A DNA stretch of 64,000 nucleotides from Anaeramoeba ignava BMAN. Taxonomy: Eukaryota > Protista > Anaeramoebae. The notes beneath the pieces are model-generated. The model was not told where the DNA came from and searched no databases. It worked only from the letters and a program-made list of their open reading frames with translations. The translations under genes were made by a program, and so were the position numbers. Shown piece by piece: positions 1 through 60,366 of this stretch (within the stretch, counting starts at the first letter, position 1; each line of letters opens with the position of its first letter). The DNA lies in assembly GCA_028826165.1 (NCBI GenBank), contig JAPDFW010000008.1:33859-97858 (forward strand). Reading direction: 5' to 3'.

Positions 1-2293
1 GAAAAACAGCACTTCATTTAGCATGTGAAAATGGAAGAATAAGATCTGTTATTGAACTTTCTAAATTATGGAGCAAATATTAATTTAACTTGCAATGTAT
101 ATTATTTATTTTATATTTATTCATTTTAAATTTATTTTATATTTGAAAAAATAATAAACAAAATAAATAGTTTGTATTTAATTATTTATTTAATAATTAA
201 TATCAAAATTAAATTTTAAATTTTAAATAAAAAAAAATAATTAGAATGTATTTTAATTTTTATTAAAATTAAATTAATTTAAATTTAAAATAAAATATTT
301 ATTTATATTTATATTTATATAGGGAGTTTGATTCAATTTAATAAATAAATAAATAAATAAATAAAATAATCCTTATTATTTTCCAAATTATTTTCCAAAT
401 TATTAGAAAGTAAATGAAAAATCCAAAAAATATAAATATAAATAATATAAATATAAATATAAATATAAATAATATAAATATAAATATAAATATAAAAATA
501 TTAGGAATGTGATCCACTTACAATTGCTGAAGAAAAGAAATATTCTGAAGTAGTACATATACTTAAGAAATATATAAATGGAGAAGATTATTCTTACGTT
601 TTAAGTGAATCACAAGATTTTATAGAAATTGAAAAACTATTACAAGAAAGTATCAAGAAAAAAGAAGAAGAAGAAGAAAAAGAAAAAGAAAAAGAAAAAG
701 AATCTCATAAAAAAAAAAGAAAAGCAAAAAGATCCAAAAAAAAACAAATTGAAAATCAAATTGAAATTGAAAATGAAATTGAAAATGAAAATGAAAATCA
801 AATTGAAAATGAAAATGAAAATGAAACAACAGAAAATGAAACAACAGAAAATGAAACAACAGAAACAGAAACAGATATTGAAAATGAAAATGATGATGAT
901 GATGATGATGAAAAACTAATTGATTTAACTTCAGCATTAATATTTAAACCATCATTGATAAAAGAAAATCCAACAAATAATGAAAACATTAATGTAGAAA
1001 TAAGTGAAAAAAAAGAACCAATTAATAATTTATCCGAAAATACAATTTCTGAAAATGGTATTAACTTAAATCTTATTAAGGCAAGAGAAAATTTAAGAAG
1101 TTTTTTAAGTTCAAAAGATCAAAAACTTGCCAAAATTCGAACAATTAAAAAGAATTTTAATGAACAAGGATTGAGTCTTATTGAAAATATTTTAATTCAA
1201 AAAAAGCAAAGTATTGAAAAAGAAAAAGAAAAAGAAAATCAAAATGAAAAAGAAAAATCAAAATCAAAATCAAAATCAAAATCAAAATCAAAATCAAAAT
1301 CAAAATCAAAAACCAGATAATAAATTAACTGATACAGATAAATTCAGAGAACAATTTAGCTTAACATCAAAAGATAGATTATTAGAATTTGATCCAAATT
1401 CATTAACAGATGTACAAAAAATAGGAGAAGGAGCATATGGAACTGTATTTAAAGCAAAAATGGATGAAATTGATGTTGCGATTAAATATTTCAAATTCAA
1501 ATTACAAAAGAAAGAAAGAGAAAGAGCAACATCAGAATTCAAAATTCTCAAATCATTAAATTATCCATTTATTGTTTCTTTTCTTGGATATAGTTTAAAT
1601 CCATATTGTATTATGATGGAATTTTGTGATCAAGGAAGTTTATCAGATTTAATTTATAATAACAAAATCGAATTTACTCAAGAAGAAATGTTTAAAATTT
1701 TCAAAGAAATCACATTTGCATTAATTTATCTTCATTCAAAACAAATTATCCATCGAGATCTTAAAAGTCAAAATATATTAATTGATCAACATGGAAGAGT
1801 AAAATTAGCAGATTTCGGATTAGCAACATTTACAGACTCAGAAAAACAATTATCAGCTGTTGGAACACCTAATTGGACAGCACCAGAAGTTCTTCAACGA
1901 TTAAAATATTCATATTCAGTAGATATTTTTTCAATTGGAATGATTATTTATGAAGTTACTCATAGAATAATTCCATTTGATAAACAAAATATTTTTGAAA
2001 TTATGATGAATATTCAAAATGGAATTAGACCATCTTTAAAAGATGATAATATTTTTAATGATATTATTGTTCAATGTTGGGCTCAAGATCCAAATGAAAG
2101 ACCTACTGCTACAGAATTACTTACAATGTTGAGTGATTTAGAAACACAAACTAAAAATCAAAATCAAAATCAAAATCAAAATTCAAATCAAAATCAAAAT
2201 CAAAATCAAAATCAAAATCAAAATCAAAATCAAAATCAAAATCAAAATCAAAATCAAAATCAAAATCAAAATCAAAATCAAAATCAAAATTAA
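1..2293 (+). CDS. Ankyrin-repeat plus TKL-group protein kinase, 5'-truncated by the window edge. Exons <1-96, 171-173, 245-247, 323-325, 407-409, 505-2293
   Basis: 1-96 reads KTALHLACENGRIRSVIEL/LNYGANINLTCN (one extra T near 58-60), with a GT donor at 97. After the TAG at 502-504 it reads ECDPLTIAEEKKYSEVVHILKKY, then an acidic linker with frameshifts in A-runs and the AATCAA tract. The kinase domain is intact: IGEGAYGTV, VAIK, HRDLKSQN, DFG, GTPNWTAPE. Poly-QN tail. Confidence 0.85.
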
Positions 2294-16788: not shown

Positions 16789-18614
16789 ATGAATGATTGT
16801 TTATTTTTTGGTCAAAATCAATATCCAAAACTTATCAAAAATGAACCAAATAAAATAGCAAAACCAATTCAATTTAAATTTGAAAATGAAAATGAAAATG
16901 AAAATGAAAAACAAATTAAACAAATTTCATCAGCAAATTTTTCAACAATTTTCCTTTTTAAAAATGGAAAAGCAATAGAATATTTAAATGATAAAGATTC
17001 AAAACAAAAATCCTGAAAAATTCAAATTGAAGAAAATATTCAAAAAGTAACTGTTGGTTATCATAATGAAGCTATTTTAACAATAGAAGGAAATGTATTT
17101 TTGCAATTTTCCTTTTGAAAATGGGAGAATATAAAGATTCAAAACAAAAATATATTAACAAAAAATACAAAAGAATTTATCAATATTTCATCATTAATTG
17201 AAGATCCAAATGATAGAATAATTGAAGATATTGTTTCTGGTTACAGTTCAATTTACTTATTAACTTCAAATCAAAATGTTTATGGAATTGGTTCAAATCA
17301 ATATTGTCAACTTGGTTTTGATTTTAAAACACTTTATGAAACAGAAAAACCAATTTTAATGATGAAAAATGTTTCTAAAATATTTTCAGGAAATACATCA
17401 GATTGCATTTTTCTTTTAAATTCAAATCAAGAATTATTTGGATGCGGATATAATTATTCTGGTCAACTTGGATTAGGAGAATCAAGAAAAGAAGAAACAG
17501 AAATCCAAAAATTAACCAAAATCCAAAATATTCCAAAAGGCAAAATAATTGATATTCAATATGGAATTTCTTTTTCAATAATGTTGATTGAAAATCAAAA
17601 CGAAAACCCAAAAAGAAAACTTTATTCATGTGGATATTATGGATATAATGGACTTGGCAAAATACTTGAAAATACTTATGAATTTACTGAAATCAAATCA
17701 TCTTTATTTGAAGATAATGATGATAATATTCTTGATTTTTCTGTTGGACATTCTCATACTTTGATTTTAACTTCTAAAGGGAAAGTAATTGGATTTGGAG
17801 ATAATTATTATGGTCAATTAGGAACTGAAGATACAAATAATCAATCAATTCCAATTCAAATTGAACTTCCTAAATTAAGATTTAATGAAAATATTTCTAA
17901 TTATCATGTTCTTTGTGGATCTTTAAAATCATTCCTTTATTCTTCTCCTTCTTTTTCCAATCTTGAAGAAGATTTGATAAAATTATTTAGAAGAAAAGAA
18001 TTTTGTGATATTTCATTTAAAACAGAAAATGGAGAAATAATTGAAGCTCATAAATTAATATTGAAATATAGATTAAATCAAAATCAAAATCAAAATCAAA
18101 ATGAAAAACTTCAAGAAATTATTTCAAAAAAATCAATTAAAGAATCAAATCAAATATTTGAAATGATTTATTCAAACAAAATTATAAATCCAAAATTATA
18201 TTCTGAAATTAAAGAAATTATAAATTTAAATGAAAAAATTGAAGAAACAATGAAAAGAATTTATTTAAATGAAAATGAAAAAGATTTTATTATTGAAAGA
18301 AAAGAAAAACAGTATAAATTTCCCAAAATTAATATTAATAATGAGAAGTGAATTATATCGAGGAATGTTTTTATCTGTAACTGAAGACAAATCTAAATAA
18401 AGTTACAGATTATAGTGAATTAAGTAATGAATCATTTCAAATATTTGAATATTGGATTTATTCAAATCAAATTAAAAATGAAATTGAAATTACACAAGAA
18501 ATAATTGAAGAAATTAAAATTGGAATTGATTATTTTCAATTAAATCAAACAAATCCAAATTTATTTGATTTATTAATTAATAAATTTAATAACCAAAATC
18601 AAAATCAAAATTAA
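16789..18614 (+). CDS. RCC1-repeat plus tandem BTB protein, copy A. Frameshifted (pseudogene or consensus errors)
   Basis: Collinear with copy B: GSNQYCQLG, GCGYNYSGQLG, GFGDNYYGQLG, EFCDISFKTENGEIIEAHKLIL, MRSELYRGMF. Frame breaks near 17010, 17100-17160, 18325 and 18395. Confidence 0.75.
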
Positions 18615-18734
18615 AATCAAAATCAAAATCAAAATCAAAATCAAAATTAAAATCAAAATCAAAATCAAAATCAAAATCAAAATCAAAATTAAAATAAAAA
18701 TTAAAATTTTTTTTTCATTTTTTTCTTTTTAAAA

Positions 18735-20721
18735 ATGAATGAAATTTTATTTTTTGGTCAAAATGAATATCCAAAACTTATCAAAAATAAATCAAAAGGA
18801 ATAACAAAACCAATTCAATTTAAATTTGAAAATGAAAATGAAAATGAAAATGAAAATGAAAAAGAAAAAGAAAAATGAAAATGAAAATGAAAATGAAAAA
18901 CAAATTAAACAAATTTCATCAGGAAACTTTTCAACAATTTTCCTTTTTAAAAATGGAAAAGCAATAGAATATTTAAGAGATTCAAATCAAAATCCTGAAA
19001 AAATTCAAATTGAAAATATTCAAAAAGTGTCTGTTGGTCATGAAAATGAAGCTATTTTAACATTAGAAGGAAATGTATTTGCAAAAGGAAAATATATTAA
19101 TTCAAAAAATCCAAAAGAATTTATTAATATTTCATCATTAATTGAAGATACAAATGATAGAGTAATTGAAGATATTGTTTCTGGTTACAGTTCAATTTAC
19201 TTATTAACTTCAAATCAAAATGTTTATGGAATTGGTTCAAATGGTTGGGGTCAACTTGGTTTGCATTATGAAACACTTCAAAGAACAGAAAAACCAATTT
19301 TAATGATGAAAAATATTTCTAAAATATTTTCAGGAAATACATCAGATTGCATTTTTCTTTTAAATTCAAATCAAGAATTATTTGGATGCGGATATAATTA
19401 TCATGGTCAACTTGGATTAAAAGAAGCAATACTACAGGCAAAAGTCTATAAATTAACTCAATTCCAAAATATTCCAAAAGGCAAAATAATTGATATTAAA
19501 GGTGGATTTAATCATTCAATAATGTTAATTGAAGATGAAGATGAAAATGAAAATGAAAATGAAAATCCAAAAAGAAGACTTTATTCAACTGGAGATTATA
19601 AATCTAATGCACTTGGCAAGGCTCAAGATACAAAAATATTTACTGAAATCAAATCACCTTTATTTGAAAATGATGAAGATAATATTCTTAAAATTTCTTG
19701 TGGACAATATCATAATTTGATTTTAACAACAAATGGGAAATTGATAGTATTTGGAAATAATGAATTTGGTCAATTAGGAACTGGAGATATAAACCATCAA
19801 CCAACTCCAATTCAAATTGAACTTCCTAAATTAAGATTTAATGAAAATATTTCCAATTATCATGTTTCTTGTGGAAATAATAAATCATTTCTTTATTATT
19901 CTCCTCATTCTTTTTCCAATCTTGAAGAAGATTTTATAAAATTATTTGAAAGAAAAGAATTTTGTGATATTTCATTTAAAACAGAAAATGGAGAAATAAT
20001 TGAAGCTCATAAATTAATATTGAAATATAGATTAAATCAAAATCAAAATCAAATTGAAAAACTTCAAGAAATTATTTCAAAAAAATCAATTAAAGAATCA
20101 AATCAAATATTTGAAATGATTTATTCAAACAGAATTATAAATCCAATATTATATTCAGAAATTAAAGAAATTATAAATTCAAATGAAAAAATAGAAGAAA
20201 CAATGAAAAGAATTTATTTAAATGAAAATGAAAATGAAAATGAAAAAGATTTTATAATTGAAAGAGAAGAAAAACAATATAAATTTCCAAAATTAATATT
20301 AATAATGAGAAGTGAATTATATCGAGGAATGTTTTTATCTGTAACAGAAGACAAATCTAATAAAGTTACAGATTATAGTGAATTAAGTAATGAATCATTT
20401 CAAATATTTGAATATTGGATTTATTCAAATCAAATTAAAGATGAAATTGAAATTACACAAGAAATAATTGAAGAAATTCAAATTGGAATTGATTATTTTC
20501 AATTAAATCAAACATATCCAAATTTATTTGATTTATTAATTAATAAATTTAATAATCAAAATCAAAATCAAAATCAAAATCAAAATCAAAATCAAAATCA
20601 AAATCAAAATCAAAATCAAAATCAAAATCAAAATCAAAATCAAAATCAAAATCAAATTCAAATTCAAATTCAAAATCAAAATCAAAAAAAGAATAAAGAA
20701 AAAAATTGTTTAATTTTTTAA
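18735..20721 (+). CDS. RCC1-repeat plus tandem BTB protein, copy B, with a poly-QN spacer and C-terminal CaaX (CLIF)
   Basis: Likely ATG at 18735 (MNEILFFGQNEYPKLIK, matching copy A), with one frameshift in the GAAAAT/GAAAAA tract near 18870. RCC1 GxNxxGQLG repeats, two BTB domains, ending KKNKEKNCLIF. Confidence 0.88.
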
Positions 20722-20740
20722 GAAATCAAATAAAAGAAAC

Positions 20741-23700
20741 TCAAAAACAAGAACACCCTTTAGATTTTTCATCTTTTCTTTGTGGTTTTTGAGTATTTAA
20801 TTGCTTTTTTTGTTTTGATTTTTTTTCTTGAATTAAATTTGGAGATTCTGAAACTTGAAAAAATTCCATTGCTTCTTCAATTTCTTGTAATAAATTCTTT
20901 GGAATATTATGAACATCCAATTCATTACAATAAAGAAATTTCAAAAAAATTTCCATTGATTTAATACTCAGCATTGATAAATCAGTCACTTGATTTGATT
21001 CATCTTGAACACTAACAAACATTCCTCTAAAAAATCCACTTCTTGCTGCCAAAACTTCTTTATGAGCTAAAAAACTTTTTTCTGTTCCTTTTGATTCATC
21101 TTTTTTGATAATCTTGAAATTTTTGCTTTCGTTTTGTGAATATAAATCCAAAAAACTTTTCTGCAATCCAACCAAATTAGATTTTGATTCAATTTCTTTT
21201 GCACTCATTCCAATTTCTTCTCCAATTTTAAATATTAAATTTTGTGAGTTTGGAAATTCTGCAAAATTTAAATTTCCACTATAAATCCACTTAAGAAATA
21301 TTTCCAGTTCTTTTTTCTCTTTTTTGATACTTATTAGTTTTAAATTTTCCAGATTTTTCCCAATTCTGTTTTCTAAAATGAGTTTATGAGAACAAACTTT
21401 TCCTTCTCTCGTTTCAAAATCAAAATCACACAACTCTTGTCTATCAAAAAATTGTAAATAATCTTGAACTAATGTGAAAAATAAAAGAATTTGAATTTCA
21501 GGATCATCAGTTAATTGAAAAGCTTGAAGATTCTTTTGATTTCCATTTTGATTTAAACAAAAAAAAAAGACAAAAAGTAAAATTTAAATTTGTAAAAAAA
21601 TTATTTTTGAAAGTTTTCAATTTTTTGATTTTACTTCCTATTTAATCCAAAATAAATCATTACTAAATATTCTTTTCTTTTCTTCTTCTTTTCATAACTC
21701 AAAAAAAATTACTTCCTAAATTGAAAAATATTATATTTTCATATTAAAATAAAAATTTAAATAATTAATTAGTTTTTTTTTTTGATTTAAACATTAGGAA
21801 TTGTTGGATCTGCTCCAGCTAAAATAAAAGATGATATAATTTGAATTTTATTTTCCTTTGGCATTTCTGTCATACAAGTAAAATGAAGTTGTGTTGATTT
21901 CTTTGATATAAATATTAATATTATTTATTTTGATGAATTAATTTTTTTTGTTGTTCTTCTTGCGAATTTTTTTGAAAAAGAAAATATTCTAAATGGATTA
22001 CAAACTAATCAAGAAGATTTATTTAGATTAAATTTTTATTTTTGGTTCTTGAAGAAAAATTACAAGATTAGTTTTGTTGACATCATAACCGTTTTTAATA
22101 TATTCTGAAATTTTTTCAACAGATTTTTCTTTGACATACAAACACATTGTGTTCCAATTCTAGTTTTAATTCAATTTTTTAAATTTAATTCAATTTTTTA
22201 GTTTTAATTCCAATTTTTTTTTGAATTAACATTATAAATTAATTTTCTTGCAAAATTTTGCATCATTGTTTTCAAATTATCCATTTCTTTTATTGATGTT
22301 TCTTCAAACATCATTGAGTATTCTTTTGCAAAAGCAAATCCTTCTTTTTTTGTAACTTCTCGATTTTCTTCAAAATCTAAAATTATTTTTTTTTTGGATC
22401 AAAAAATAAAATTCCATTTCTTTTTCTTATCTAAAAATAAAAATAAAAACCAAGTTTATTTCCAATAAGAAGAAATTCAGGTGAAAAATCTTCAGAAAAA
22501 GTTGATTTAAGTTCAGTAATCCATTTTCGAAGATTTTCAAATGTTTGTTTTTTTGTAATGTCATAAACTAATACTATTGCTTTTGATCCTCTATAATACA
22601 TTGGACTAACAAAAATTTTATAAAGAAAAAATAAAAAGCAAAATTTTTTGAATAAATTTTTGAGATTTGTTTTTAAAAAAAGAAATTAAATCACGCCAAA
22701 ACTCGATATCTTTCAACTCCAGCCTAAAAAGAAATAATCAATAAATTTAATTTGATTTAATTTAATTTAATTTGATTTAATTTAATTTGATTTAATTTAA
22801 TTTAATTTGATTTAATTTGATTTGGATTTGATTTAATTTAATTTAATTTAATTTGATTTAATTTGATTTAATTTAATTTAATTTGATTTTAATTTAATTT
22901 AATTTAATTTAATTTAATTTAATTTAATTTAATTTGGATTTGATTTAATTTAATTTGGATTTAATTTGATTTGATTTGATTTGATTTAATTTTAAATTTT
23001 GATTTAATTTAATTTGATTTAATTTAATTTAATTTAATTTGATTTTAATTTTAATTTGGATTTAATTTAATTTAATTTAATTTAATTTAATTTAATTTAA
23101 TTTAATTTAATTTGATTTAATTTTTTTTGAAATTTGATTTAATTTCCAATTTAATTTAAATTTTGGAAAAATTTAAACCTTTTTAATTTGATTTAATTTA
23201 ATTTAAGTTTAATTTAATTTAAATTTGGAAAAATTTTAATTTATTTTTTGAATTTAAAATTTTGGAATTCTGGATTTGATTTTGGATTTGATTTGATTAA
23301 ATTTGATTTAATTTAATTTATTTTGATTTAATTTAATTTAATTTGGATTTGAATTAAATTTTAATTTGGATTTAATTTAATTTGATTTAATTTAATTTAA
23401 TTTAATTTGGATTTAATTTAATTTGATTTGATTTGATTTGATTTGATTTGATTTGATTTGGATTTAATTTGGATTTAATTTGGATTTAATTTGGATTTAA
23501 TTTGGATTTAATTTGATTTGATTTGATTTAATTTAATTTAATTTGATTTGATTTAATTTGGATTTGACTTGATTTAATTTGAATTTTTTTTTGATAATAA
23601 AATACAGTATCCCACAACTCAAGTTTAACTTGTATTTGATCAATTTCATATGTTTTTGTTAAAAAAGATGCGCCAATAGTTGATTGAGTATCTAATTTTA

Positions 23701-23871
23701 TTAATTTTATTTTATTAAAAAAAATTTAAATGATAAAAACGTTTTCTTTTTATTTTAAAGTTTTATTTATTTACCAAGTGATATAACATTAGAAAAAATA
23801 GCTAAACAAATTGAACTTTTTCCAACTGTTGTATCACCAAGAAAAACAACTTTAAAAATTTGAGTATTCAT
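20741..23871 (-). CDS. Rab5/22-like GTPase - ankyrin repeats - BTB - BTB fusion with a C-terminal Cys motif, about 505 aa. Exons 23871-23775, 23691-23606, 22723-22695, 22605-22451, 22376-22231, 22159-22064, 22004-22002, 21900-21793, 21715-21713, 21637-21635, 21532-20741
   Basis: [64 protein letters not shown]. Then IKNGYDVNKTNL-F-KSTQLHFTC...AGADPTIPN-E-E-NLQAFQLTDDPEIQILL, followed by ELCDFDFETREGKVCSHKLIL, AHKEVLAARSGFFRGMF, ending KGCSCF. All ten introns are GT-AG and phase-consistent; total 1518 nt. Confidence 0.85.
22745..23585. repeat. (ATTTA/ATTTG/ATTTGG)n pentamer satellite in intron 2 of the Rab-ANK-BTB gene
   Basis: Seen directly. The intron spans 22724-23605. Confidence 0.9.
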
Positions 23872-24859: not shown

Positions 24860-26491
24860 TTATTTATTTGAATTTTCAATTAAATGATTCATTCTTGGAT
24901 TTAATTGGTAATAATCAATTATATCTTGAAAATCATTAATAACTTCAATAGGTGTATCTGAATCAAATGTTCCAAAATACATTAACTTAATAATTGATTT
25001 AATTTCAACTGGTGTTCTGTTATTATAATCACTAACTTGATTTGAAGAATCTGTAACGCTGATAAACATTCCTCGAAATAAATCACTTCTAACAAGTAAT
25101 ATAAATTTATGAACTTTGATTTCTTCATTTTGACAAATAATTTTAAAATCTTTGGTTTCTTCTTCATAAAATAATTCACTAAAATCTTTTTCTAAATTAT
25201 TTATTCCTCCAGTTTTTTCAATAATATTTTGGATTTTAAATTCTTCTTCAATTTCTCTTAAAATAAGATAATTTTTTGTTGTTCCAGTATAAATGAATTC
25301 TAAAAATTCTTGAATTTCTTTGATTGTTTTTGTTTCAAGAAATTCTAATAACTTTTCAATTAAAATTTCATTTTTAATGCAAATTCTTTGTTCAATAAAT
25401 ATTTTATGAGCAGAAATAACTCCATCAATTCCTTTTATATTAACATCAACTAAATCATTTAAAGATAAAGCACGTTGTAGATCTTCTTGAAGAACAGAAA
25501 AAGTAAGAGAAACTGAATAGATTATAGAATTACTTCTTCCTGTTTCAATCATTAAGTGTTTATGTTTATTATTGAGCTTTAAAGATTCTTTTTGTGGATA
25601 TGGTTTATAATCTTTATCTGAATTTGGAAGATATAATTCTAAATCTTCAGTTAATAAAGAAGCATCCCAACAACATCCAGAAACACAAGATACTCTTTTA
25701 TCATTAAATCCTTCAACTTTTCTAAAACTTCCATTACTTGGTTGAAAAGTTCCACCTGCAATCCAAATTTCATGAAATCCTTTTTCGTTTTCAATAATTG
25801 CTATTGAATGTTGATATGAACAAGAAATCATTATTACTTTCTTATCACATAAATCAGGAACAAGTTGATAACCTTTAACAGATGATTTTGAATTAATTCC
25901 TAATTGTCCAGCTCCATTTCTTCCTGATGAGTAAAAATTTCCTGAAAAATCTTGAAAGAAAAAATGAAAAGCATAATCATCACTAAATACTCTTGAAACA
26001 TTTTTAGAAACAAAAATAGGAATCCATATATTACTATCTCCACTCACTCCAGTTTCACAATCAATATTATATCCACAACTATATAAATCGTTGTTTGAAG
26101 TAATGAAATAAGATTGATAACAACCACATGCAATATCTTTAATAAAAATTTTTTTTTCAATAAAAAATTCAATTCTTTTTGGTGAATCAAGTGATTGACT
26201 TGAATTTCCATGACCTTGATGTCCATAAGTATTTCTTCCATAACTATAAACTGTTCCATCAGATTTGAGAATCAAAAAATGTTCGAAACTTACTCGAGCT
26301 TTTACAACATCTTCAAGTGAAAGTTTTTTAATATTTTGATTTGATTCTTGATATTCATAAAGTTTTCCATTTGTTGTTGTTATCATTGTTCCTGGTGTTC
26401 CACTTGATATTTCTTTGATTTCTTCTTCAATATTAATATTTAAAGGTTTTATATCTGTTCCTTTATTTTGAAAAATCCAAAGTTCATTCAT
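24860..26491 (-). CDS. RCC1-repeat plus tandem BTB protein, copy C (543 aa, intronless)
   Basis: YSYGRNTYGHQG, IKDIACGCYQS, SSGRNGAGQLG, VISAHKIFI, KDFKIICQNEEIKVHKFILLVRSDLFRGMF. Confidence 0.92.
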   Translation of the reverse strand: MNELWIFQNKGTDIKPLNINIEEEIKEISSGTPGTMITTTNGKLYEYQESNQNIKKLSLEDVVKARVSFEHFLILKSDGTVYSYGRNTYGHQGHGNSSQSLDSPKRIEFFIEKKIFIKDIACGCYQSYFITSNNDLYSCGYNIDCETGVSGDSNIWIPIFVSKNVSRVFSDDYAFHFFFQDFSGNFYSSGRNGAGQLGINSKSSVKGYQLVPDLCDKKVIMISCSYQHSIAIIENEKGFHEIWIAGGTFQPSNGSFRKVEGFNDKRVSCVSGCCWDASLLTEDLELYLPNSDKDYKPYPQKESLKLNNKHKHLMIETGRSNSIIYSVSLTFSVLQEDLQRALSLNDLVDVNIKGIDGVISAHKIFIEQRICIKNEILIEKLLEFLETKTIKEIQEFLEFIYTGTTKNYLILREIEEEFKIQNIIEKTGGINNLEKDFSELFYEEETKDFKIICQNEEIKVHKFILLVRSDLFRGMFISVTDSSNQVSDYNNRTPVEIKSIIKLMYFGTFDSDTPIEVINDFQDIIDYYQLNPRMNHLIENSNK

Positions 26492-26499
26492 TTAAAAAA

Positions 26500-26545
26500 A
26501 ATATGAAAAAAAATGAAAAAAATGAAAAAAATGAAAAAAATGATT
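26500..26545 (-). promoter_or_regulatory. Tandem T-rich TCA initiator-like motifs (TTTTTTCATTTTT)n; example of a window-wide element
   Basis: The same motif lies on the sense strand shortly upstream of most ATGs, e.g. 4360, 18713, 23895, 28240, 31210-31260, 33220, 39270, 45160, 52385, 52583, 54741. Confidence 0.6.
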
Positions 26546-26600
26546 TTTGAATTTTAATTTTTATTTTTATTGAATTTATTTTGAATTTGAATTTTGATTA

Positions 26601-28229
26601 TTATTTATTTGAATTTTCGATTAAATGATTCATTCTTGGATTTAATTGGTAATAATCAATTATATCTTGAAAATCATTAATAACTTCAATAGGTGTATCT
26701 GAATCAAATGTTCCAAAATACATTAACTTAATAATTGATTTAATTTCAACTGGTGTTCTGTTATTATAATCACTAACTTGATTTGAAGAATCTGTAACGC
26801 TGATAAACATTCCTCGAAATAAATCACTTCTAACAAGTAATATAAATTTATGAACTTTGATTTCTTCATTTTGACAAATAATTTTGAAATCTTTGGTTTC
26901 TTCTTCATAAAATAATTCACTAAAATCTTTTTCTAAATTATTTATTCCTCCAGTTTTTTCAATAATATTTTGGATTTTAAATTCTTCTTCAATTTCTCTT
27001 AAAATAAGATAATTTTTTGTTGTTCCAGTATAAATGAATTCTAAAAATTCTTGAATTTCTTTGATTGTTTTTGTCTCAAGAAATTCTAATAATTTTTCAA
27101 TTAAAATTTCATTTTTAATGCAAATTCTTTGTTCAATAAATATTTTATGAGCAGAAATAACTCCATCAATTCCTTTTATATTAACATCAACTAAATCATT
27201 TAAAGATAAAGCACGTTGTAAATCTTCTTGAAGAACAGAAAAAGTAAGAGAAACTGAATAGATTATAGAATTACTTCTTCCTGTTTCAATCATTAAGTGT
27301 TTATGTTTATTATTGAGTTTTAAAGATTCTTTTTGTGGATATGGTTTATAATCTTTATCTGAATTTGGAAGATATAATTCTAAATCTTCAGTTAATAAAG
27401 AAGCATCCCAACAACATCCAGAAACACAAGATACTCTTTTATCATTAAATCCTTCAACTTTTCTAAAACTTCCATTACTTGGTTGAAAAGTTCCACCTGC
27501 AATCCAAATTTCATGAAATCCTTTTTCATTTTCAATAATTGCTATTGAATGTTGATATGAACAAGAAATCATTATTACTTTCTTATCACATAAATCAGGA
27601 ACAAGTTGATAACCTTTAACAGATGATTTTGAATTAATTCCTAATTGTCCAGCTCCATTTCTTCCTGATGAGTAAAAATTTCCTGAAAAATCTTGAAAGA
27701 AAAAATGAAAAGCATAATCATCACTAAATACTCTTGAAACATTTTTAGAAACAAAAATAGGAATCCATATGTTACTACCTCCACTCACTCCAGTTTCACA
27801 ATTAACATTATATCCACAACTATATAAATCGTTGTTTGAAGTAATGAAATAAGATTGATAACAACCACATGCAATATCTTTAATAAAAATTTTTTTTTCA
27901 ATAAAAAATTCAATTCTTTTTGGTGAATCAAGTGATTGACTTGAATTTCCATGACCTTGATGTCCATAAGTATTTCTTCCATAACTATAAACTGTTCCAT
28001 CAGATTTGAGAATCAAAAAATGTTCATAGCTTACTCGAGCTTTTACAACATCTTCAAGTGAAAGTTTTTTAATATTTTGATTTGATTGATATTCATAAAG
28101 TTTTCCATTTGTTGTTGTTATCATTGTTCCTGGTGTTCCACTTGATATTTCTTTGATTTCTTCTTCAATATTAATATTTAAAGGTTTTATATCTGTTCCT
28201 TTATTTTGAAAAATCCAAAGTTCATTCAT
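26601..28229 (-). CDS. RCC1-repeat plus tandem BTB protein, copy D (542 aa), near-identical tandem duplicate of copy C
   Basis: Same motifs. The duplication unit is about 1.74 kb and includes the flanks. Confidence 0.92.
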   Translation of the reverse strand: MNELWIFQNKGTDIKPLNINIEEEIKEISSGTPGTMITTTNGKLYEYQSNQNIKKLSLEDVVKARVSYEHFLILKSDGTVYSYGRNTYGHQGHGNSSQSLDSPKRIEFFIEKKIFIKDIACGCYQSYFITSNNDLYSCGYNVNCETGVSGGSNIWIPIFVSKNVSRVFSDDYAFHFFFQDFSGNFYSSGRNGAGQLGINSKSSVKGYQLVPDLCDKKVIMISCSYQHSIAIIENEKGFHEIWIAGGTFQPSNGSFRKVEGFNDKRVSCVSGCCWDASLLTEDLELYLPNSDKDYKPYPQKESLKLNNKHKHLMIETGRSNSIIYSVSLTFSVLQEDLQRALSLNDLVDVNIKGIDGVISAHKIFIEQRICIKNEILIEKLLEFLETKTIKEIQEFLEFIYTGTTKNYLILREIEEEFKIQNIIEKTGGINNLEKDFSELFYEEETKDFKIICQNEEIKVHKFILLVRSDLFRGMFISVTDSSNQVSDYNNRTPVEIKSIIKLMYFGTFDSDTPIEVINDFQDIIDYYQLNPRMNHLIENSNK

Positions 28230-39318: not shown

Positions 39319-42201
39319 ATGAGTAATCCAGAAAAAGATAATAAAAATACTCTTTTACATCTTGCTTGTCAAAATCAAGACTCTATTGATGTTATCAAAT
39401 ATTTAATTGAAAAAGGAACAGATATTAATGCCAAAAACAATGAAAATGCAACTCCTTTACATTTTGCTTGTCAATTTCAAAATTCATTTGAAACTATTAA
39501 ATATTTAATTGAAAAAGGAGCAGATGTTAATGTTCAGACAAATTATTCTGCAACTCCTTTACATTTTGCTTGTCAATTTCAAAATTCATTTGAAACTATT
39601 AAATTGTTAATTGAAAAAGGAGCAGATGTCAATGCCAAAACAAACCATTATTTTGCAACCCCTTTTCATACTGCTTGTCAATTTCAAACATTTGAAACTA
39701 TTAAATTGTTAATTGGAAATGGAGCAGATGTCAATGCCAAAACAAGTGAAAATCAAACACCTTTTCATATTGCTTGTCAATTTCAAACTTCATTTGAAAC
39801 TATTAAATTGTTAATTGAAAAAGGAGCAGATATCAATGTCAAAACAAACGATAATCAAACACCTTTACATTTGGTTTGCCAATTTCAAAATTCATTTGAA
39901 ACTATTAAATTGTTAATTGAAAAAGGAGCAGATGTCAATGCCAAAACAAAGGATAATCAAACACCTTTACATTTGGTTTGTCAATTTCAAAAAGAAAATT
40001 TATTGGAAATTGTCAAATTACTTATAGAAAAAGGAGCAAATCCCGATATTCAAAACAAAATGTCTCAAACACCTTTAATTTATGTTTGCCAAAATCAAAA
40101 CAAAAATTCAATAGAAGTTGTGAAATATTTAGTTGAAAATGATGTGTATGTCAACATAAAAGCCATTGATACTCAAACACCTTTGCATTTTGTTTGTAAA
40201 TATAATCACAAACAAATATTTGAAGTGATTAAGTTAATGATTCAAAAAGGTGCAGATCCCAATACTAAAACGAAATACAGCCTCGTAACTCCCTTTCATA
40301 TTGCTTGTCAATATCAAACATCATTTGAAATTATTAATTTTTTGATTGATAATGGAGCAGATGTCAATGCCAAAACAAAAAAGAACGAAACTCCTTTACA
40401 TTTTGCTTGTCAAATTCATGCTTCAATTGAAATTATTAAATTGCTAATTGAAAAAGGAGCAGATGCCAATGCCAAAACAAATTTCAACGAAACGCCATTA
40501 GATTTTGTTTGCAATTTACAAAAACCAAATTTAATTGATATCATGGAAATTCTCATTAACAACGGAGCAAATCCTAATACTCAAACAACAACTAATTCAA
40601 CACCCTTATATTTTATTTGCCAATCCCAATATAAAGACACAGTCAAAAACATGCAATATTTACTTGAAAGAGGAGCTCTTCTTACACACTCAAGAAAATC
40701 CAAACAATCACTACTTCATTTTGCTTGTCAACAACAAAACTCAGAATATACTATTAAGTTTCTAATTGAAAAAGGCATGAGTCCTGATTTAAAAGATTCT
40801 AAAAAAACAACGCCATTACATCTGGCATGTCAATATCAAAATTCGATTGAAATTATTAAATATTTAATTGAGAATGGAGCAAATCCAAACCAGAAAAACG
40901 ATGACTTCGAACTACCTTTGCATTTTGCCTGCAAAATATACAATAAAAACTCAACCGAAATTATCAAGTATTTAATTGAATTAGGATCTGATGTGAATTC
41001 AAAGGCAGTCAAAAATTACACACCTTTGCATTATATTTGTCAACAAAAAAAAGCAAATTTTGAAACAATCAAGTTCCTCGTTGAAAATGGAGCCGATATT
41101 AATGCCGAAATTGGATATTATAAACAAACCCCTCTTCATTTATCTTGTAAACACCAAAACTCAATTCAAATTATCCGATATTTGATTGAGAAAGGAGCAA
41201 ATATAGATGCAAAAACACATTCACAAGAAACACCTTTATTGTTGGCAATCCTAGAAAACAACCAAAATGCAGCCAAAGTATTGCTAATGAATGATGCAGA
41301 AGTTATTGGTTTGAATAAGAAAATGTTCACACAAGAATTACTTGATTTGTACACACAAATTTACTCATTGAATCAAGATATGAATCAATTACTCAATTCA
41401 AACGAAAATTTTTCAGATTTCGAAATTGTATGCAGTGATTTCGAAAAATTTCATCTTCATAAATTGATTCTCTTAAAAAGATTTGATAACAACGAATCCA
41501 CACTAGAAAAATTTGTCAAACTTTGCCAACAAAAACCAAAACACATTGTTCAATTAATTGTTAATTTTATTTATACAGGTTTTGCCTCTTTTGATCAATC
41601 GATCCAAAAATTGCAAAAATTAGTTAATTGCAATAAAGAGATAGATGAATGTCATCGTCTATTTTCCCAAATGAAAATTTCTTGGGATGAAATAAACAAA
41701 AAAGAAGCAGAATTTATATCATTGCAAAAGGAACAAAACAAAGAACAACTGGAAATAAATTCCTTATTAGAAGACTTTTTCAACGAAATTGGATTTGATT
41801 CAAAGTGGATTAACTCGAAAAAAGGAAGAAGAGGAATTACCAAAGATTTCCATCAATTATTCCAAGATGATTCTTCAAAAGATTTTGCAATCATTTGTGA
41901 AAATGATCAAGAAATTAAAGCTCATAAATTAATATTAATAATAAGAAGTGAATTGTTTAAAGGAATGTTTTTAAATGTTCAAGATTCTTCAAATCAAGTT
42001 CATGATTATTCAGGAAAATCATTTCAAACAATTCAACAATTAATCTATTTCTTTTATCATGATGAAATTGATGAAACAAAAGAAATTACAACTGAAATTG
42101 CTCAAGAAATTGAAGAATCTCAATATTATTATCAATTAAATCCAAATTCCATCTTAAAAATTATTCTTCAATTCGTTACTAATTCTATTTTAAGAAAATA
42201 A
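39319..42201 (+). CDS. Ankyrin-repeat (about 19 repeats) plus tandem BTB protein, 960 aa, intronless
   Basis: Repeated TPLHFACQ...LIEKGADVNAKT, then FSDFEIVC..FHLHKLIL and KDFAIICENDQEIKAHKLILIIRSELFKGMF. Confidence 0.95.
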   Translation: MSNPEKDNKNTLLHLACQNQDSIDVIKYLIEKGTDINAKNNENATPLHFACQFQNSFETIKYLIEKGADVNVQTNYSATPLHFACQFQNSFETIKLLIEKGADVNAKTNHYFATPFHTACQFQTFETIKLLIGNGADVNAKTSENQTPFHIACQFQTSFETIKLLIEKGADINVKTNDNQTPLHLVCQFQNSFETIKLLIEKGADVNAKTKDNQTPLHLVCQFQKENLLEIVKLLIEKGANPDIQNKMSQTPLIYVCQNQNKNSIEVVKYLVENDVYVNIKAIDTQTPLHFVCKYNHKQIFEVIKLMIQKGADPNTKTKYSLVTPFHIACQYQTSFEIINFLIDNGADVNAKTKKNETPLHFACQIHASIEIIKLLIEKGADANAKTNFNETPLDFVCNLQKPNLIDIMEILINNGANPNTQTTTNSTPLYFICQSQYKDTVKNMQYLLERGALLTHSRKSKQSLLHFACQQQNSEYTIKFLIEKGMSPDLKDSKKTTPLHLACQYQNSIEIIKYLIENGANPNQKNDDFELPLHFACKIYNKNSTEIIKYLIELGSDVNSKAVKNYTPLHYICQQKKANFETIKFLVENGADINAEIGYYKQTPLHLSCKHQNSIQIIRYLIEKGANIDAKTHSQETPLLLAILENNQNAAKVLLMNDAEVIGLNKKMFTQELLDLYTQIYSLNQDMNQLLNSNENFSDFEIVCSDFEKFHLHKLILLKRFDNNESTLEKFVKLCQQKPKHIVQLIVNFIYTGFASFDQSIQKLQKLVNCNKEIDECHRLFSQMKISWDEINKKEAEFISLQKEQNKEQLEINSLLEDFFNEIGFDSKWINSKKGRRGITKDFHQLFQDDSSKDFAIICENDQEIKAHKLILIIRSELFKGMFLNVQDSSNQVHDYSGKSFQTIQQLIYFFYHDEIDETKEITTEIAQEIEESQYYYQLNPNSILKIILQFVTNSILRK

Positions 42202-54783: not shown

Positions 54784-57700
54784 ATGCCACCAATTAAAGG
54801 AAATCCAAGAAAAACAAGACCTTCAAGAAGAAAAGGAGTAAACTATTAAATTAAATATTAAATTAAATATAAAATTAAATATAAAATTATTTATAAAATT
54901 ATTTATAAAATTATATATAAAATTATATATAAAATTATTTATTAAATTATTTATAAAATTATTTATAAAATTAAATATAAAATTATTTATAAAATTATTT
55001 ATAAAATTAAATATAAAATTAAATATAAAATTAAATATAAAATTATTTATAAAATTATTTATAAAATTAAATATAAAATTATTTATAAAATTATTTATAA
55101 AATTATTTATAAAATTATTTATAAAATTAAATATAAAATTATTTATAAAATTAAATATAAAATTATTTATAAAATTATTTATAAAATTATTTATAGAATT
55201 ATTTATAAAATTATTTATAAAAATTATATAAAATTATTTATAAAATTATTTATAAAATTATTTATAAAATTATTTATAAAATTATTTATAAAATTATTTA
55301 TAAAATTATTTATAAAATTATTTATAAAATTAAATATAAAATTATTTTATAAAATTATTTATAAAATTATTTATAAAATTATTTTATAAAATTAATTATA
55401 AAATTAAATATAAAATTAAATATAAAATTATTTATTAAATTAACATAAAATTATTTTATAAAATTATTTATAAAATTATTTTAAAAATTATATATAAAAA
55501 TTATATATAAAATTATATATAAAAATTATTTATAAAATTATTTATAAAATTATTTATAAAATTATTTATAAAATTATTTTATAAAATTATTTATAAAATA
55601 TTATTTAAAAATTATATATAAAATTATTTATAAAATTATTTATAAAATTATTTATTTCAAATTAAATATAAAATTATTTATAAAAATTATTTATAAAATT
55701 ATTTATAAAATTAAATATAAAATTAAATATAAAATTATTTATAAAATTAAATATAAAATTAAATATAAAATTATTTATAAAATTAAATATAAAATTATTT
55801 ATAAAATTAAATATAAAATTAATTATAAAATTATTTATAAAATTAAATATAAAATTATTTATAAAATTAAATATAAAATTATTTATAAAATTAAATATAA
55901 AATTATTTATAAAATTAAATATAAAATTAATTATAAAATTATTTATAAAATTATTTATAAAATTAAATATAAAATTATTTTATAAAATTAATTATAAAAT
56001 TAATTATAAAATTATTTATAAAATTTTATATTTATAAAATTATTTATAAAATTAAATATAAAATTAAATATAAAAATTATTTATAAAAATTATTTATAAA
56101 ATTATTTATAAAATTATTTATAAAATTATTTATAAAATTAAATATTAAATTAATTATAAAATTATATATAAAATTAAATATAAAATTATTTATAAAATTA
56201 TTTATAAAATTAAATATAAAAATTAAATATAAAATTATTTATAAAATTATTTATAAAATTAAATTTAAAATTAATTATTAAATTAAATATTAAATTATTT
56301 ATAAAATTAAATATTAAATTATTTATAAAATTTAAATATAAAATTATTTATAAAATTATTTATAAAATTAAATATAAAATTATTTTATAAAATTAATTAT
56401 AAAAAAATATTTATAAAATTAGTTATTAAATTAATTATAAAAATTAGTTATTAAATTAATTATAAAATTATTTATTAACTTAATTATAAAATTATTTATA
56501 AAAATTAAATATAAAATTAAATATAAAATTATATATAAAATTATTTATAAAATTATTTTATAAAATTATTTATAAAAATTATTTATAAAATTATTTATAA
56601 AATTATTTATAAAATTATTTATAAAATTATTTATAAAATTATTTATAAAATTATTTTATAAAATTAAATATAAAATTAAATATAAAATTAAATATAAAAT
56701 TAAATATAAAATTATTTATAAAATTATTTATAAAATTAATTATAAAATTAAATATAAAATTATTTATAAAATTAATTATAAAATTATTTATAAAATTATT
56801 TATAAAATTAATTATAAAATTAAATATAAAATTATTTATAAAATTATTTATAAAAATTATTTATAAAATTATTTATAAAATTAAATATAAAATTATTTAT
56901 AAAATTAAATATAAAATTAAATATTAAATTAATTATAAAATTATTTATAAAATTATTTATAAAATTATTTATAAAATTAATTATAAAATTAAATATAAAA
57001 TTAAATATAAAATTAAATATAAAATTAAATATAAAATTAAATTTAAAATTAATTATTAAATTAAATATTAAATTATTTTATAAAATTAAATATTAAATTA
57101 TTTTATAAAATTTAAATATAAAATTATTTATAAAATTATTTATAAAATTAAATATAAAATTATTTTATAAAATTAATTATAAAAATATTTATAAAAATTA
57201 GTTATTAAATTAATTATAAAATTAGTTATTAAATTAATTATAAAATTATTTATTAACTTAATTATAAAATTATTTATAAAATTAAATATAAAATTAAATA
57301 TAAAATTATATATAAAATTATTTTATAAAATTATTTTATAAAATTATTTTATAAAATTATTTATAAAATTATTTATAAAAATTATTTATAAAATTATTTT
57401 ATAAAATTATTTTATAAAATTATTTATAAAATTATTTATAAAAATTAAATATAAAATTAAATATAAAATTAAATATAAAATTAAATATAAAATTATTTAT
57501 AAAATTATTTATAAAATTAATTATAAAATTAAATATAAAATTATTTTATAAAATTAATTATAAAATTATTTATAAAATTATTTATAAAATTAATTATAAA
57601 ATTAAATATAAAATTATTTATAAAATTATTTATAAAATTATTTATAAAATTATTTTATAAAATTAAATATAAAATTATTTTATAAAATTAAATATAAAAT

Positions 57701-60366
57701 TAAATATTAAATTAATTATAAAATTATTTATAAAATTATTTATAAAATTATTTATAAAATTAATTATAAAATTAAATACAAAAATTAAATATAAAATTAA
57801 ATATAAAATTAAATATAAAATTAAATTTAAAATTAATTATTAAAATTAAAATTATTTATAAAATTAAATTAAATTATTTATAAAATTTAAATATAAAATT
57901 ATTTATAAAATTATTTATAAAATTAAATATAAAATTATTTATAAAATTAATTATAAAATTATTTATAAAATTATTTATAAAATTATTTATAAAATTATTT
58001 ATAAAATTATTTTATAAAAATTATTTATAAAATTATTTATAAAATTATTTATAAAATTATTTATAAAATTAATTATAAAATTATTTATAAAATTAATTAT
58101 AAAATTAAATATAAAATTATTTATAAAATTAATTATAAAATTAAATATAAAATTATTTATAAAATTATTTATAAAATTATTTATAAAATTAAATATAAAA
58201 TTATTTATAAAATTATTTATAAAATTATTTATAAAATAATTTATAAAATTATTTATAAAATTATTTTTATAAAATTATATATTAAATTATTTTATAAAAT
58301 TATTTATAAAATTAAATATAAAATTATTTATAAAATTAATTATAAAATTAATTATAAAATTAAATATAAAATTAAATATAAAATTATTTATAAAATTATT
58401 TATAAAATTATTTATAAAATTATTTATAAAATTAAATATAAAATTATTTATAAAATTAAATATAAAATTAAATATAAAATTAAATATAAAATTAATTATA
58501 AAATTAAATATAAAATTATTTATAAAATTATTTTATAAAATTAAATATAAAATTATTTATAAAATTATTTATAAAATTAAATATAAAATTATTTATAAAA
58601 ATTATTTATAAAATTATTTATAAAATTATTTATAAAATTATTTATAAAATTAAATATTAAATTAAATATAAAATTATTTATAAATTTAAATATAAAATTA
58701 AATATAAAATTATTTATAAAATTAAATATAAAATTATTTATAAAATTATTTATAAAATTATTTATAAAATTATTTATAAAATTATTTATAAAATTATTTA
58801 TAAAATTAAATATTAAAATTAAATATAAAATTAAATATTAAAATTATTTATAAAATTATTTATAAAATTAAATATAAAATTAAATATAAAATTATTTATA
58901 AAATTAAATATAAAATTAAATATAAAATTATTTATAAAATTAAATATAAAATTATTTATAAAATTATTTATAAAATTATTTATAAAATTATTTATAAAAT
59001 TAAATATAAAATTATTTATAAAATTATTTATAAAATTATTTATAAAATTATTTATAAAATTAAATATAAAATTATATATAAAATTATTTATAAAATTATT
59101 TATAAAATTATTTATTAAATTATTTATTAAATTATTTATAAAATTATTTATAAAATTGAATATTAAATTAATTATAAAATTATTTATAAAATTATTTATA
59201 AAATTAATTATAAAATTATTTATAAAATTAAATATAAAATTAAATATAAAATTATTTATAAAATTATTTATAAAATTATATATAAAATTAAATATAAAAT
59301 TATTTATAAAATTATTTATAAAATTATTTATAAAATTAAATATAAAATTAATTTATAAAATTAATTATAAAATTAAATATAAAATTATTTATAAAATTAA
59401 TTATAAAATTATTTATAAAATTATTTATAAAATTATTTATAAAATTAATTATAAAATTATTTATAAAATTAATTATAAAATTATTTATAAAATTAAATAT
59501 AAAATTAAATATAAAATTATTTATAAAATTAATTATAAAATTATTTATAAAATTATTTATAAAATTAAATATAAAATTAAATATAAAATTATTTATAAAA
59601 TTATTTATAAAATTATTTATAAAATTATATATAAAATTAAATATAAAATTATATAAAATTAAATATAAAATTATTTATAAAATTAAATATAAAATTAAAT
59701 ATAAAATTAAATATAAAATTAAATATAAAATTAATTATAAAATTATTTATAAAATTATTTATAAAATTATTTATAAAATTATTAATAAAATTATTTATAA
59801 AATTAATTATAAAATTAATTATAAAATTATTTATAAAATTAAATATAAAATTAAATATAAAATTAAATATAAAATTAAATATAAAATTAAATATAAAATT
59901 AAATATAAAATTATTTATAAAATTATTTATAAAATTATTTATAAAATTATTTATAAAATTATTTATAAAATTATTTATAAAATTATTTATAAAATTATTT
60001 ATAAAATTATTTATAAAATTATTTATAAAATTATTTATAAAATTATTTATAAAATTATTTATAAAATTATTTATAAAATTATATATAAAATTATTTATTA
60101 AATTATTTATTAAATTAAATATAAAATTATTTATTAAATTAATTATAAAATTTTAGAGAACTTCAAAAAGAGTTTATTTTATTAGACAACTTATTAGAGA
60201 AGTTTCTGGTTTTGCACCTTATGAAAGAAGAACTATTGAACTTATTAAAAATGGAAGAGAAAAAAGAGCTTTGAAATTTTGCAAAAAAAGACTTGGAACT
60301 CAAAAAAGAGCTAAAAAGAAAAGAGAAGAACTTCAAAATTATGTCTTATCTTTAAGAAAAAAATAA
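54784..60366 (+). CDS. RPL36: 60S ribosomal protein eL36, 87 aa. Exons 54784-54837 and 60157-60366, split by a 5319-nt intron
   Basis: [18 protein letters not shown]|[61 protein letters not shown] at 54838, TAG at 60154-60156, phase 0. Confidence 0.95.
54845..60150. repeat. (ATAAAATTATTT/ATAAAATTAAAT)n 12-mer satellite, about 5.3 kb, forming the RPL36 intron
   Basis: Seen directly. Rare variants (TTAGTTATT, ATTAACT) recur about 780 bp apart, near 56420-56480 and 57200-57260. Confidence 0.95.

What the first reader, a model, noticed from the sequence alone, without database searches (positions are those of the whole stretch)
21533..22063. Three more 3-nt micro-exons in an unrelated gene restore canonical ankyrin spacing
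Seen on the minus strand: TAG|TTT|GTAATC (22004-22002), TAG|GAA|GTAATT (21715-21713) and TAG|GAA|GTAAAA (21637-21635), separated by introns of 59-102 nt. With them the protein reads GYDVN-KTNLFKS-TQLH and GADPT-IPNEENL-QAF. That is exactly 7 residues between GxDxN and the TPL position, as in the intronless ankyrin gene at 39319 (GADVN-AKTSENQ-TPF). Without them the loops are 1 and 2 residues short. This protein-level fit supports the exons independently of the splice signals.
Basis: partly seen in the sequence, partly recalled or inferred. Interest (0 to 1): 0.9.

Follow-up and report, generated by a model that had tools for sequence, protein, structure and literature searches.

The report
Single-codon exons in amoeba binding loops
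In the anaerobic amoeba Anaeramoeba, the variable tips of ankyrin-repeat loops are written one amino acid per exon: three such 3-letter exons in this gene are supported by a spliced transcript, and the genome holds roughly 2,500 more that its annotation appears to have missed.

Summary
Confirmed. The window is Anaeramoeba ignava. The contig also joins upstream Rab-like exons, giving one 505-aa Rab-ankyrin-BTB-BTB gene; GenBank's model lacks the Rab part and both GAA exons. The architecture is genome-wide and specific to 3 nt: tandem pairs 716 (3 nt) versus 29/9/3 (2/4/6 nt); about 2,500 excess single sites; stop triplets 0 versus 81 AAT. Transcript-derived proteins of three paralogs have exactly two extra residues at 16 of 16 insertion sites, all hairpin tips. 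A. flamelloides has candidate exons at the same tip. Best reading: ordinary spliceosomal exons, included in the main mRNA, from an old repeat module (96+3+3 nt) built by local intron copying. Some genes hold surplus arrays (4-36 exons), which could diversify loops by skipping; untested. First-stage notes reported this architecture elsewhere in this genome. I found no paper describing it.

The parts
23775..23871 (-). Exon 1 (97 nt), ATG and Rab-like P-loop (GDTTVGKSS)
   Evidence: Open model; weak Pfam Ras/Roc hit; contig length arithmetic fits, piece itself not printed
23606..23691 (-). Exon 2 (86 nt), Rab-like, ends at WDT; followed by an 882-nt repeat-filled intron
   Evidence: Pfam Ras E 5e-5; loose end of X3 at 22723 matches this exon
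22695..22723 (-). Exon 3 (29 nt), switch II with V in place of the usual Q (DTAGVE)
   Evidence: Joint 22605-22695 in X3; translation
22451..22605 (-). Exon 4 (155 nt), Rab-like
   Evidence: X3 record 204-358; Pfam Ras E 1.2e-11
22231..22376 (-). Exon 5 (146 nt), end of the GTPase domain
   Evidence: X3 record 359-504; Pfam Ras E 1.9e-5
22160..22230 (-). 71-nt GT-AG intron that joins the Rab part to the ankyrin part
   Evidence: Joint 22159-22231 in X3
22064..22159 (-). Exon 6 (96 nt), first degenerate ankyrin unit, ends ...GYDVNKTNL
   Evidence: X3 record 505-600
22005..22063 (-). Intron, 59 nt, GT..TAG, phase 0
22002..22004 (-). Single-codon exon TTT (Phe), second variable residue of the hairpin tip
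   Evidence: 3 unplaced letters at record 601-603 (letters not printed); only possible parse; recovered by a parser not given these coordinates
21901..22001 (-). Intron, 101 nt, GT..AAG, phase 0
21793..21900 (-). Exon 8 (108 nt), ankyrin unit KSTQLH...GADPTIPN
   Evidence: X3 record 604-712, the last letter being the G of the insert
21716..21792 (-). Intron, 77 nt, GT..TAG, phase 0
21713..21715 (-). Single-codon exon GAA (Glu), first variable tip residue
   Evidence: GAAGAA read in X3; unique parse
21638..21712 (-). Intron, 75 nt, GT..TAG, between two single-codon exons
21635..21637 (-). Single-codon exon GAA (Glu), second variable tip residue
   Evidence: GAAGAA read in X3; unique parse
21533..21634 (-). 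Intron, 102 nt, GT..AAG, phase 0
   Evidence: Joint 21532-21792 in X3
20741..21532 (-). Last exon (792 nt): capping repeat, two BTB-type regions, stop TGA
   Evidence: X3 record 718-1419 with no other letters; Pfam BTB E 1e-14 plus weak BTB_KLHL33
97..504 (+). Same architecture in a second ankyrin gene of the window: four single-codon exons TTT 171, AAT 245, GGA 323, AAA 407
   Evidence: Sequence and parse; no RNA laid here

Best explanation
The three triplets are ordinary spliceosomal exons of one codon each, included in the main mRNA of a Rab-ankyrin-BTB-BTB gene (shown: RNA contig, unique parse). They belong to a repeat module of about 96 nt + 3 nt + 3 nt, all phase 0, in which the two single-codon exons supply the two variable residues before the GxTPLH motif at the hairpin tip (shown in paralogs and their transcripts). 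The module is older than the split of A. ignava and A. flamelloides and spread with ankyrin-repeat duplication; later loss of single introns gave 99+3, 96+6 or intronless repeats, with loop length unchanged (inferred). Splicing probably works by intron definition on the short AT-rich introns, one intron after the other, since spliceosomes cannot sit on both sides of a 3-nt exon at once (inferred from general knowledge). New one-codon exons probably arise when an intron is copied to a site one codon away, by tandem duplication or conversion between neighbouring introns; they persist because they keep the frame and sit in loops that tolerate change (inferred). The protein is probably a Cullin-3-type adaptor whose ankyrin face binds a partner (inferred from the domain content).
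For: RNA contig with both inserts and unique parses. Genome counts specific to 3 nt. No stop triplets, 0 vs 81. 9 distinct paralog hairpins reach exactly 7 residues only with the short exons, whether one, two or a 6-nt exon is used. 16 of 16 insertions in transcript-derived proteins are 2 residues at the tip. GenBank models are bimodal, 33 linkers of 5 and 30 of 7. Candidate exons at the same tip in A. flamelloides, with GAA, AAT and TAT kept in two paralogs whose introns differ (2.6 vs 7.5 kb). Young arrays have near-identical introns (92% over aligned columns).
Against: Logan contigs drop minor variants, so constant inclusion is not shown. The letters of the 3-nt insert were not printed. Run X3 has no library record and may be the RNA used for the genome's own annotation. 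In this gene the five introns show no similarity above shuffles (0.55 vs 0.59), so the origin is inferred from other loci. Frame tolerance alone does not explain why 6-nt exons are hardly above background (908 vs 772). Surplus arrays are not explained by a fixed 7-residue loop. No RNA was seen for A. flamelloides.
Confidence: 0.7

Rival explanations
1. A diversification device: single-codon exons are cassettes that are skipped or chosen in combinations, so one gene yields many loop sequences in ubiquitin-ligase adaptors (ankyrin-BTB, BTB-TLDc), perhaps for recognising symbiont or parasite proteins. This gene would be a mostly fixed case.
For: Exons sit at target-binding loop tips. Surplus arrays exist: 4 where 1 gives canonical spacing (window 171-407); 2, 5, 4 and about 12 where 3 would (L043); 7 phase-1 exons in the TLDc GPTFG..D loop, whose length runs 0-12 across the family. 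Skipping never shifts the frame.
Against: All 16 insertions seen in transcript-derived proteins are the full two residues; no skipped transcript was seen. The arrays are nearly identical in two A. flamelloides strains (one codon change). Long loops could simply be constitutive.
Confidence: 0.25
2. Selfish or neutral intron spread: one intron sequence copies itself between the codons of existing coding sequence (Introner-like, or reverse splicing plus retro-conversion, with a 3-nt step). The exons have no function of their own.
For: In the contig C1 array, 36 triplets are only 40% alike while their introns are 92% alike; 34 of 36 use the preferred codon and none is a stop. Intron variants do not travel with codon identity (p 0.17-0.65). 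Loop length stays 7 whichever introns are present. Similar intron sequences appear on other contigs such as C137.
Against: In ankyrin genes the exons stay confined to the tip residues. Conversion between neighbouring introns plus selection on codons gives the same pattern. The test has low power, as most differences are microsatellite slippage. That array was not shown to be transcribed.
Confidence: 0.3
3. Not exons: chance AG-NNN-GT in AT-rich introns, with the extra RNA letters coming from another allele, editing or assembly error.
For: AG-NNN-GT is common in AT-rich DNA; GenBank's model skips the two GAA exons.
Against: The RNA letters match the genomic triplets in order; the contig has 0 other letters over 702 nt of the last exon; about 80-fold enrichment over 4 nt; stop-codon avoidance; splice sites kept in diverged paralogs.
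Confidence: 0.02

Closest known systems
Schistosoma mansoni micro-exon genes (MEGs) (PMC10526429)
   Same: Runs of very short, mostly frame-preserving exons that automatic annotation misses.
   Different: MEG exons are mostly 15 nt (6-81 nt in the text), introns 0.1-5 kb, 35 genes, secreted proteins with known splice isoforms. Here exons are exactly one codon, about 2,500 sites, short introns, inside folded ankyrin and TLDc domains, and skipping is not shown.
Isolated 3-nt exons: MAP4K5 (PMC8632122), Drosophila homothorax (PMC7392893), RPS24 (PMC11162997 describes its three microexons)
   Same: A 3-nt exon can be spliced in by the spliceosome.
   Different: Single cases, usually alternative. 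No chains of one-codon exons and no repeat-by-repeat placement.
Plant small microexons (PMC8831610)
   Same: Widely missed by annotation, conserved within domains, lost by intron loss in paralogs; adjacent microexons occur (5 + 12 nt).
   Different: 2,398 microexons of 1-15 nt over ten species, 9 nt the commonest in flowering plants. Here one genome has about that many at a single length, 3 nt.
DARPin library design (PMC8229355 for randomised positions on the binding surface; the D-x-x-G positions are from my own knowledge)
   Same: The two residues on separate exons are the x-x of D-x-x-G-x-T-P-L-H, positions randomised in designed binders.
   Different: An engineered library, not a gene structure. 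That the amoeba uses these exons to vary binding is untested.
RhoBTB and Rabankyrin-5/ANKFY1 (own knowledge)
   Same: Small GTPase with tandem BTB (RhoBTB); BTB with ankyrin repeats (ANKFY1).
   Different: Here a Rab-like GTPase, two short ankyrin units and two BTB-type regions form one chain. No orthology was tested.

Membership tests
Spliceosomal microexon | Internal exon of 30 nt or less between GT-AG introns | tested here: met
   3 nt each, five GT..AG introns of 59-102 nt
Spliceosomal microexon | Present in spliced RNA | tested here: met
   GAAGAA read in contig 10 of X3; 3 unplaced letters at the TTT site, letters not printed
Spliceosomal microexon | Alternative inclusion (typical of animal microexons, not required) | not testable with these tools
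   Only Logan contigs were served; they drop minor variants
Schistosome-type micro-exon gene (MEG) | Most of the gene made of 10-20 very short exons | tested here: not met
   3 of 11 exons, 9 of 1518 coding nt in this gene; a 36-exon array exists at another locus
Schistosome-type micro-exon gene (MEG) | Secreted protein, introns of 0.1-5 kb | tested here: not met
   Protein begins with a Rab-like GTPase domain; flanking introns 59-102 nt
Schistosome-type micro-exon gene (MEG) | Isoform diversity from alternative splicing of the short exons | tested here: inconclusive
   16 of 16 paralog sites show full inclusion; surplus arrays not tested
Ankyrin repeat | Gx(D/N)xN-7 residues-TPLH linker | tested here: met
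   7 and 7 with the exons; 15 of 18 in the intronless gene
Ankyrin repeat | Profile match of the two units in this gene | tested here: inconclusive
   No Pfam hit exon by exon; local profile 15.7 bits with, 13.6 without; paralogs are clear ankyrins
Rab/Ras-superfamily GTPase | G1, G3, G4, G5 motifs and Pfam Ras match | tested here: met
   GDTTVGKSS, WDTAG, NKLD, ETSIK; four exons hit PF00071 in order
Rab/Ras-superfamily GTPase | Catalytic Gln in switch II (DTAGQE) | tested here: not met
   DTAGVE; activity not tested
Introner-type mobile intron | Near-identical introns at unrelated loci with insertion signatures | tested here: inconclusive
   Not in this gene; near-identical in tandem in young arrays; other loci could not be fetched
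SRRM3/4-regulated neural microexons | Dependence on SRRM3/4 and an upstream UGC motif | not tested
   Animal system; not expected in a metamonad (own knowledge)

The most novel reading that the evidence does not exclude
Anaeramoeba uses arrays of single-codon exons as a combinatorial splicing system that varies the binding loops of hundreds of ankyrin-BTB and BTB-TLDc adaptors one residue at a time, fed by an intron that copies itself in steps of one codon.
Probability: 0.25. Interest if true: 0.96.

Novelty: new variant of a known kind. Interest (0 to 1): 0.86.

Why it matters
Three-nucleotide exons are known as rare single cases. Here about 2,500 occur in one genome, in chains of up to about 36, at a single length and at the variable tips of repeat and TLDc loops. 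This gives a natural system for two open questions: how the spliceosome handles consecutive minimal exons, and how new introns arise, since young arrays with near-identical introns are present. It also means many GenBank Anaeramoeba proteins lack loop residues, which affects structure prediction and family analyses. If the surplus arrays are alternatively spliced, it would be a new route to receptor diversity in a single-celled host of bacterial symbionts.

Tried and rejected
As the operators asked, the spliced model was searched exon by exon by reference; the search of the joined protein against databases was left out, and the joined model was only translated and scored inside local scripts. 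The HMM with/without test was weak. Pfam found no ankyrin hit in the single exons. Runs X1 and X2 gave only short repeat matches. The tool's reversed-pattern control is inflated by ATG/GAT coding repeats, so other exon lengths were used as controls. The two A. flamelloides strains are too alike (97%) to test selection, and whole-locus alignment of paralogs failed, so exon-anchored comparison was used. No transcript-derived protein was found for a gene with a surplus array. One 6-nt exon, shifted donors or acceptors, and 1+2-type splits were excluded by enumeration. Candidate 35432 lies after a stop codon and was rejected. The AlphaFold model of a paralog (pLDDT 91.9) places the tips in inter-repeat loops, but DSSP called almost no strands, so it adds little. 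Paper searches found no report of micro-exons in Anaeramoeba; the genome paper and its supplement do not mention them.

Full report
Source. The last exon matches one protein at 100%, labelled Anaeramoeba ignava. The assembly size, 42,843,398 bases in 147 contigs, equals that of A. ignava BMAN in the supplement of PMC11550330. That paper gives 80.65% A+T for the genome, 91.86% for introns, and 37.3% amino-acid identity between A. ignava and A. flamelloides.

Observation. All joints are phase 0. With them the linkers read GYDVN-KTNLFKS-TQLH and GADPT-IPNEENL-QAF, 7 residues each; the intronless gene at 39319 has 7 in 15 of 18 linkers and 8 in three. A simple splice parser scoring GC content and splice sites, not given these coordinates, recovered the same model.

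RNA. Run X3 has no library record but holds a 1538-nt contig that skips GT-AG introns, so it derives from spliced RNA. Its pieces are 22605-22451, 22376-22231, 22159-22064 (record 505-600), 21900-21792 (604-712) and 21532-20831 (718-1419). Between 21793 and 21532 it has the G laid at 21792 plus five listed letters, together GAAGAA. Between 22064 and 21900 three letters (601-603) are unplaced; the tool did not print them. Enumerating all GT/GC-AG parses gives one solution for each gap: GAA+GAA and TTT. The GAA exons are therefore shown by sequence, and the TTT exon by length plus unique parse. Contigs show presence only, so minor skipped forms are not excluded, and X3 may be the RNA used for the genome's annotation.

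The gene. The contig also removes a 71-nt intron at 22230-22160 and joins Rab-like exons upstream. The eleven exons give one open frame of 505 aa: Rab-like GTPase (four exons hit Pfam Ras in order; switch II reads DTAGVE), two degenerate ankyrin units, and two BTB-type regions. GenBank's model is 290 aa, starts at an internal Met and reads PTIPN-NLQAF, skipping both GAA exons.

More than chance. Genome-wide, two successive TAG-Nk-GTAW units 50-80 nt apart occur 716 times for k=3 (overlapping pairs counted), 29 for k=2 (mostly one satellite), 9 for k=4 (simple repeats) and 3 for k=6. Single sites in AT-only flanks number 3329 for k=3, 772 for k=4 and 908 for k=6, an excess of about 2,400-2,550 under a strict pattern. 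The first triplet of a pair is never TAA or TGA, while AAT, with the same letters as TAA, occurs 81 times across dozens of contigs.

Paralogs. Ankyrin paralogs are built of about 96 nt + 3 + 3 per repeat, for example GANVN-ARN[D][Q]EI-TPLH. Variants have one micro-exon with the other residue on a flanking exon, or one 6-nt exon. Nine distinct hairpins matched by the motif all reach 7 residues with the short exons and 5 or 6 without (one hairpin was counted twice there). Among annotated relatives the linker is bimodal, 33 times 5 and 30 times 7. For three genes a transcript-derived EukProt protein exists: it is identical to the GenBank model apart from 5, 7 and 4 insertions, each of exactly two residues at the tip. 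Against Ankyrin-1 these residues mostly align without gaps just before GxTPL, and they fall in inter-repeat loops of a model. From my own knowledge they are the x-x of the DARPin D-x-x-G turn.

Sister species. A. flamelloides genes have candidate exons at the same tip: SEN[E][N]RE-TPLH, LGN[Y]NNM-TCLH, SLNK[F]GD-TPLH. Inside their annotated introns 3-nt candidates number 39 against 5-20 for other lengths. Two paralogs keep GAA, AAT and TAT with intact splice sites although the surrounding intron is 2.6 kb in one and 7.5 kb in the other. No RNA was examined for this species.

Beyond ankyrins, and surplus arrays. A BTB-TLDc gene has seven phase-1 3-nt exons in the GPTFG..D loop, all skipped by GenBank; that loop is 0-12 residues long across the family. 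Upstream of kinase exons on contig C1 lie 36 triplets with no stop, 34 in the preferred codon, 40% alike to each other, between introns 92% alike; four have GC or AT in place of GT. Intron variants do not follow codon identity (low power). The window's own chain at 171-407 has four exons where one would give 7 residues, and L043 has 2, 5, 4 and about 12 where three would. Whether these are all included is unknown.

Mechanism. Shown: the exons are spliced in; placement at the tip; specificity to 3 nt; presence of the pattern in both species. Inferred: stepwise splicing by intron definition; an old 96+3+3 module spread by repeat duplication and eroded by intron loss; origin by local copying of introns in one-codon steps. 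In this gene the introns no longer resemble each other (0.55 vs 0.59 shuffled). Rivals are a skipping-based diversification system (0.25) and purely selfish intron spread (0.3); these are not exclusive of each other. Why 6-nt exons are so much rarer is unexplained.

Comparison and novelty. Single 3-nt exons (PMC8632122, PMC7392893), plant microexons (PMC8831610) and schistosome MEGs (PMC10526429) are known. This gene is a member of the microexon class but not a MEG. I found no paper on micro-exons in Anaeramoeba or on genome-wide one-codon exons; the library lacks most subscription papers. First-stage notes of this scan describe the same ankyrin architecture on other pieces of this genome; they are unchecked and were not used as support.

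Verdict. Real, confirmed by RNA, and part of an apparently undescribed genome-wide architecture. New variant of a known kind; interest 0.86.

Noticed in passing
G000:C1:409.3-413.1 kb (L011-L036), minus strand: 36 single-codon units with introns 92% alike, upstream of kinase exons; triplets read as a stop-free peptide in preferred codons; four AAT units have GC or AT donors. Transcription not tested.
   Followed up: partly
L040 (G000:C1:942.3-942.8 kb): BTB-TLDc gene with seven phase-1 3-nt exons in the GPTFG..D loop; GenBank P0263 skips them all. Similar triplet arrays at C1:1058-1073 kb were seen only in pattern listings.
   Followed up: partly
G000:C137:611-621 kb, C73:180 kb, C87:271 kb (listings): Introns resembling the C1 array intron family occur on other contigs; could be paralogs or a spreading intron.
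   Followed up: no
window 1-96 (+): The ankyrin exon before the 171-407 chain changes frame near position 58-70 (KTALH frame versus GANIN frame): an assembly indel or a broken gene.
   Followed up: no
window 22695-22723 (-): Rab-like switch II reads DTAGVE, lacking the catalytic Gln.
   Followed up: partly
window 22338: One-letter difference (A>G on +) between the X3 contig and the assembly; allele or assembly error.
   Followed up: no
window 20721-20741: The stop codons of the RCC1-BTB gene (+) and this gene (-) are only 19 nt apart, so their 3' ends may overlap.
   Followed up: no
window 24860-28229 (-) and 17359-20721 (+): Tandem RCC1-BTB genes; the pair at 24860 and 26601 is 99% identical.
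   Followed up: partly
window 56001-60000: About 4 kb with 0.2% G+C.
   Followed up: no
P0006 versus P0388: A GenBank model and a transcript protein share their C-terminal part exactly but differ in one whole ankyrin repeat: alternative repeat exon, recombined paralogs or chimeric assembly.
   Followed up: no
L043:16792-16884 (A. flamelloides): An unannotated 93-nt ankyrin exon inside an annotated intron, preceded by about 12 candidate single-codon exons.
   Followed up: partly
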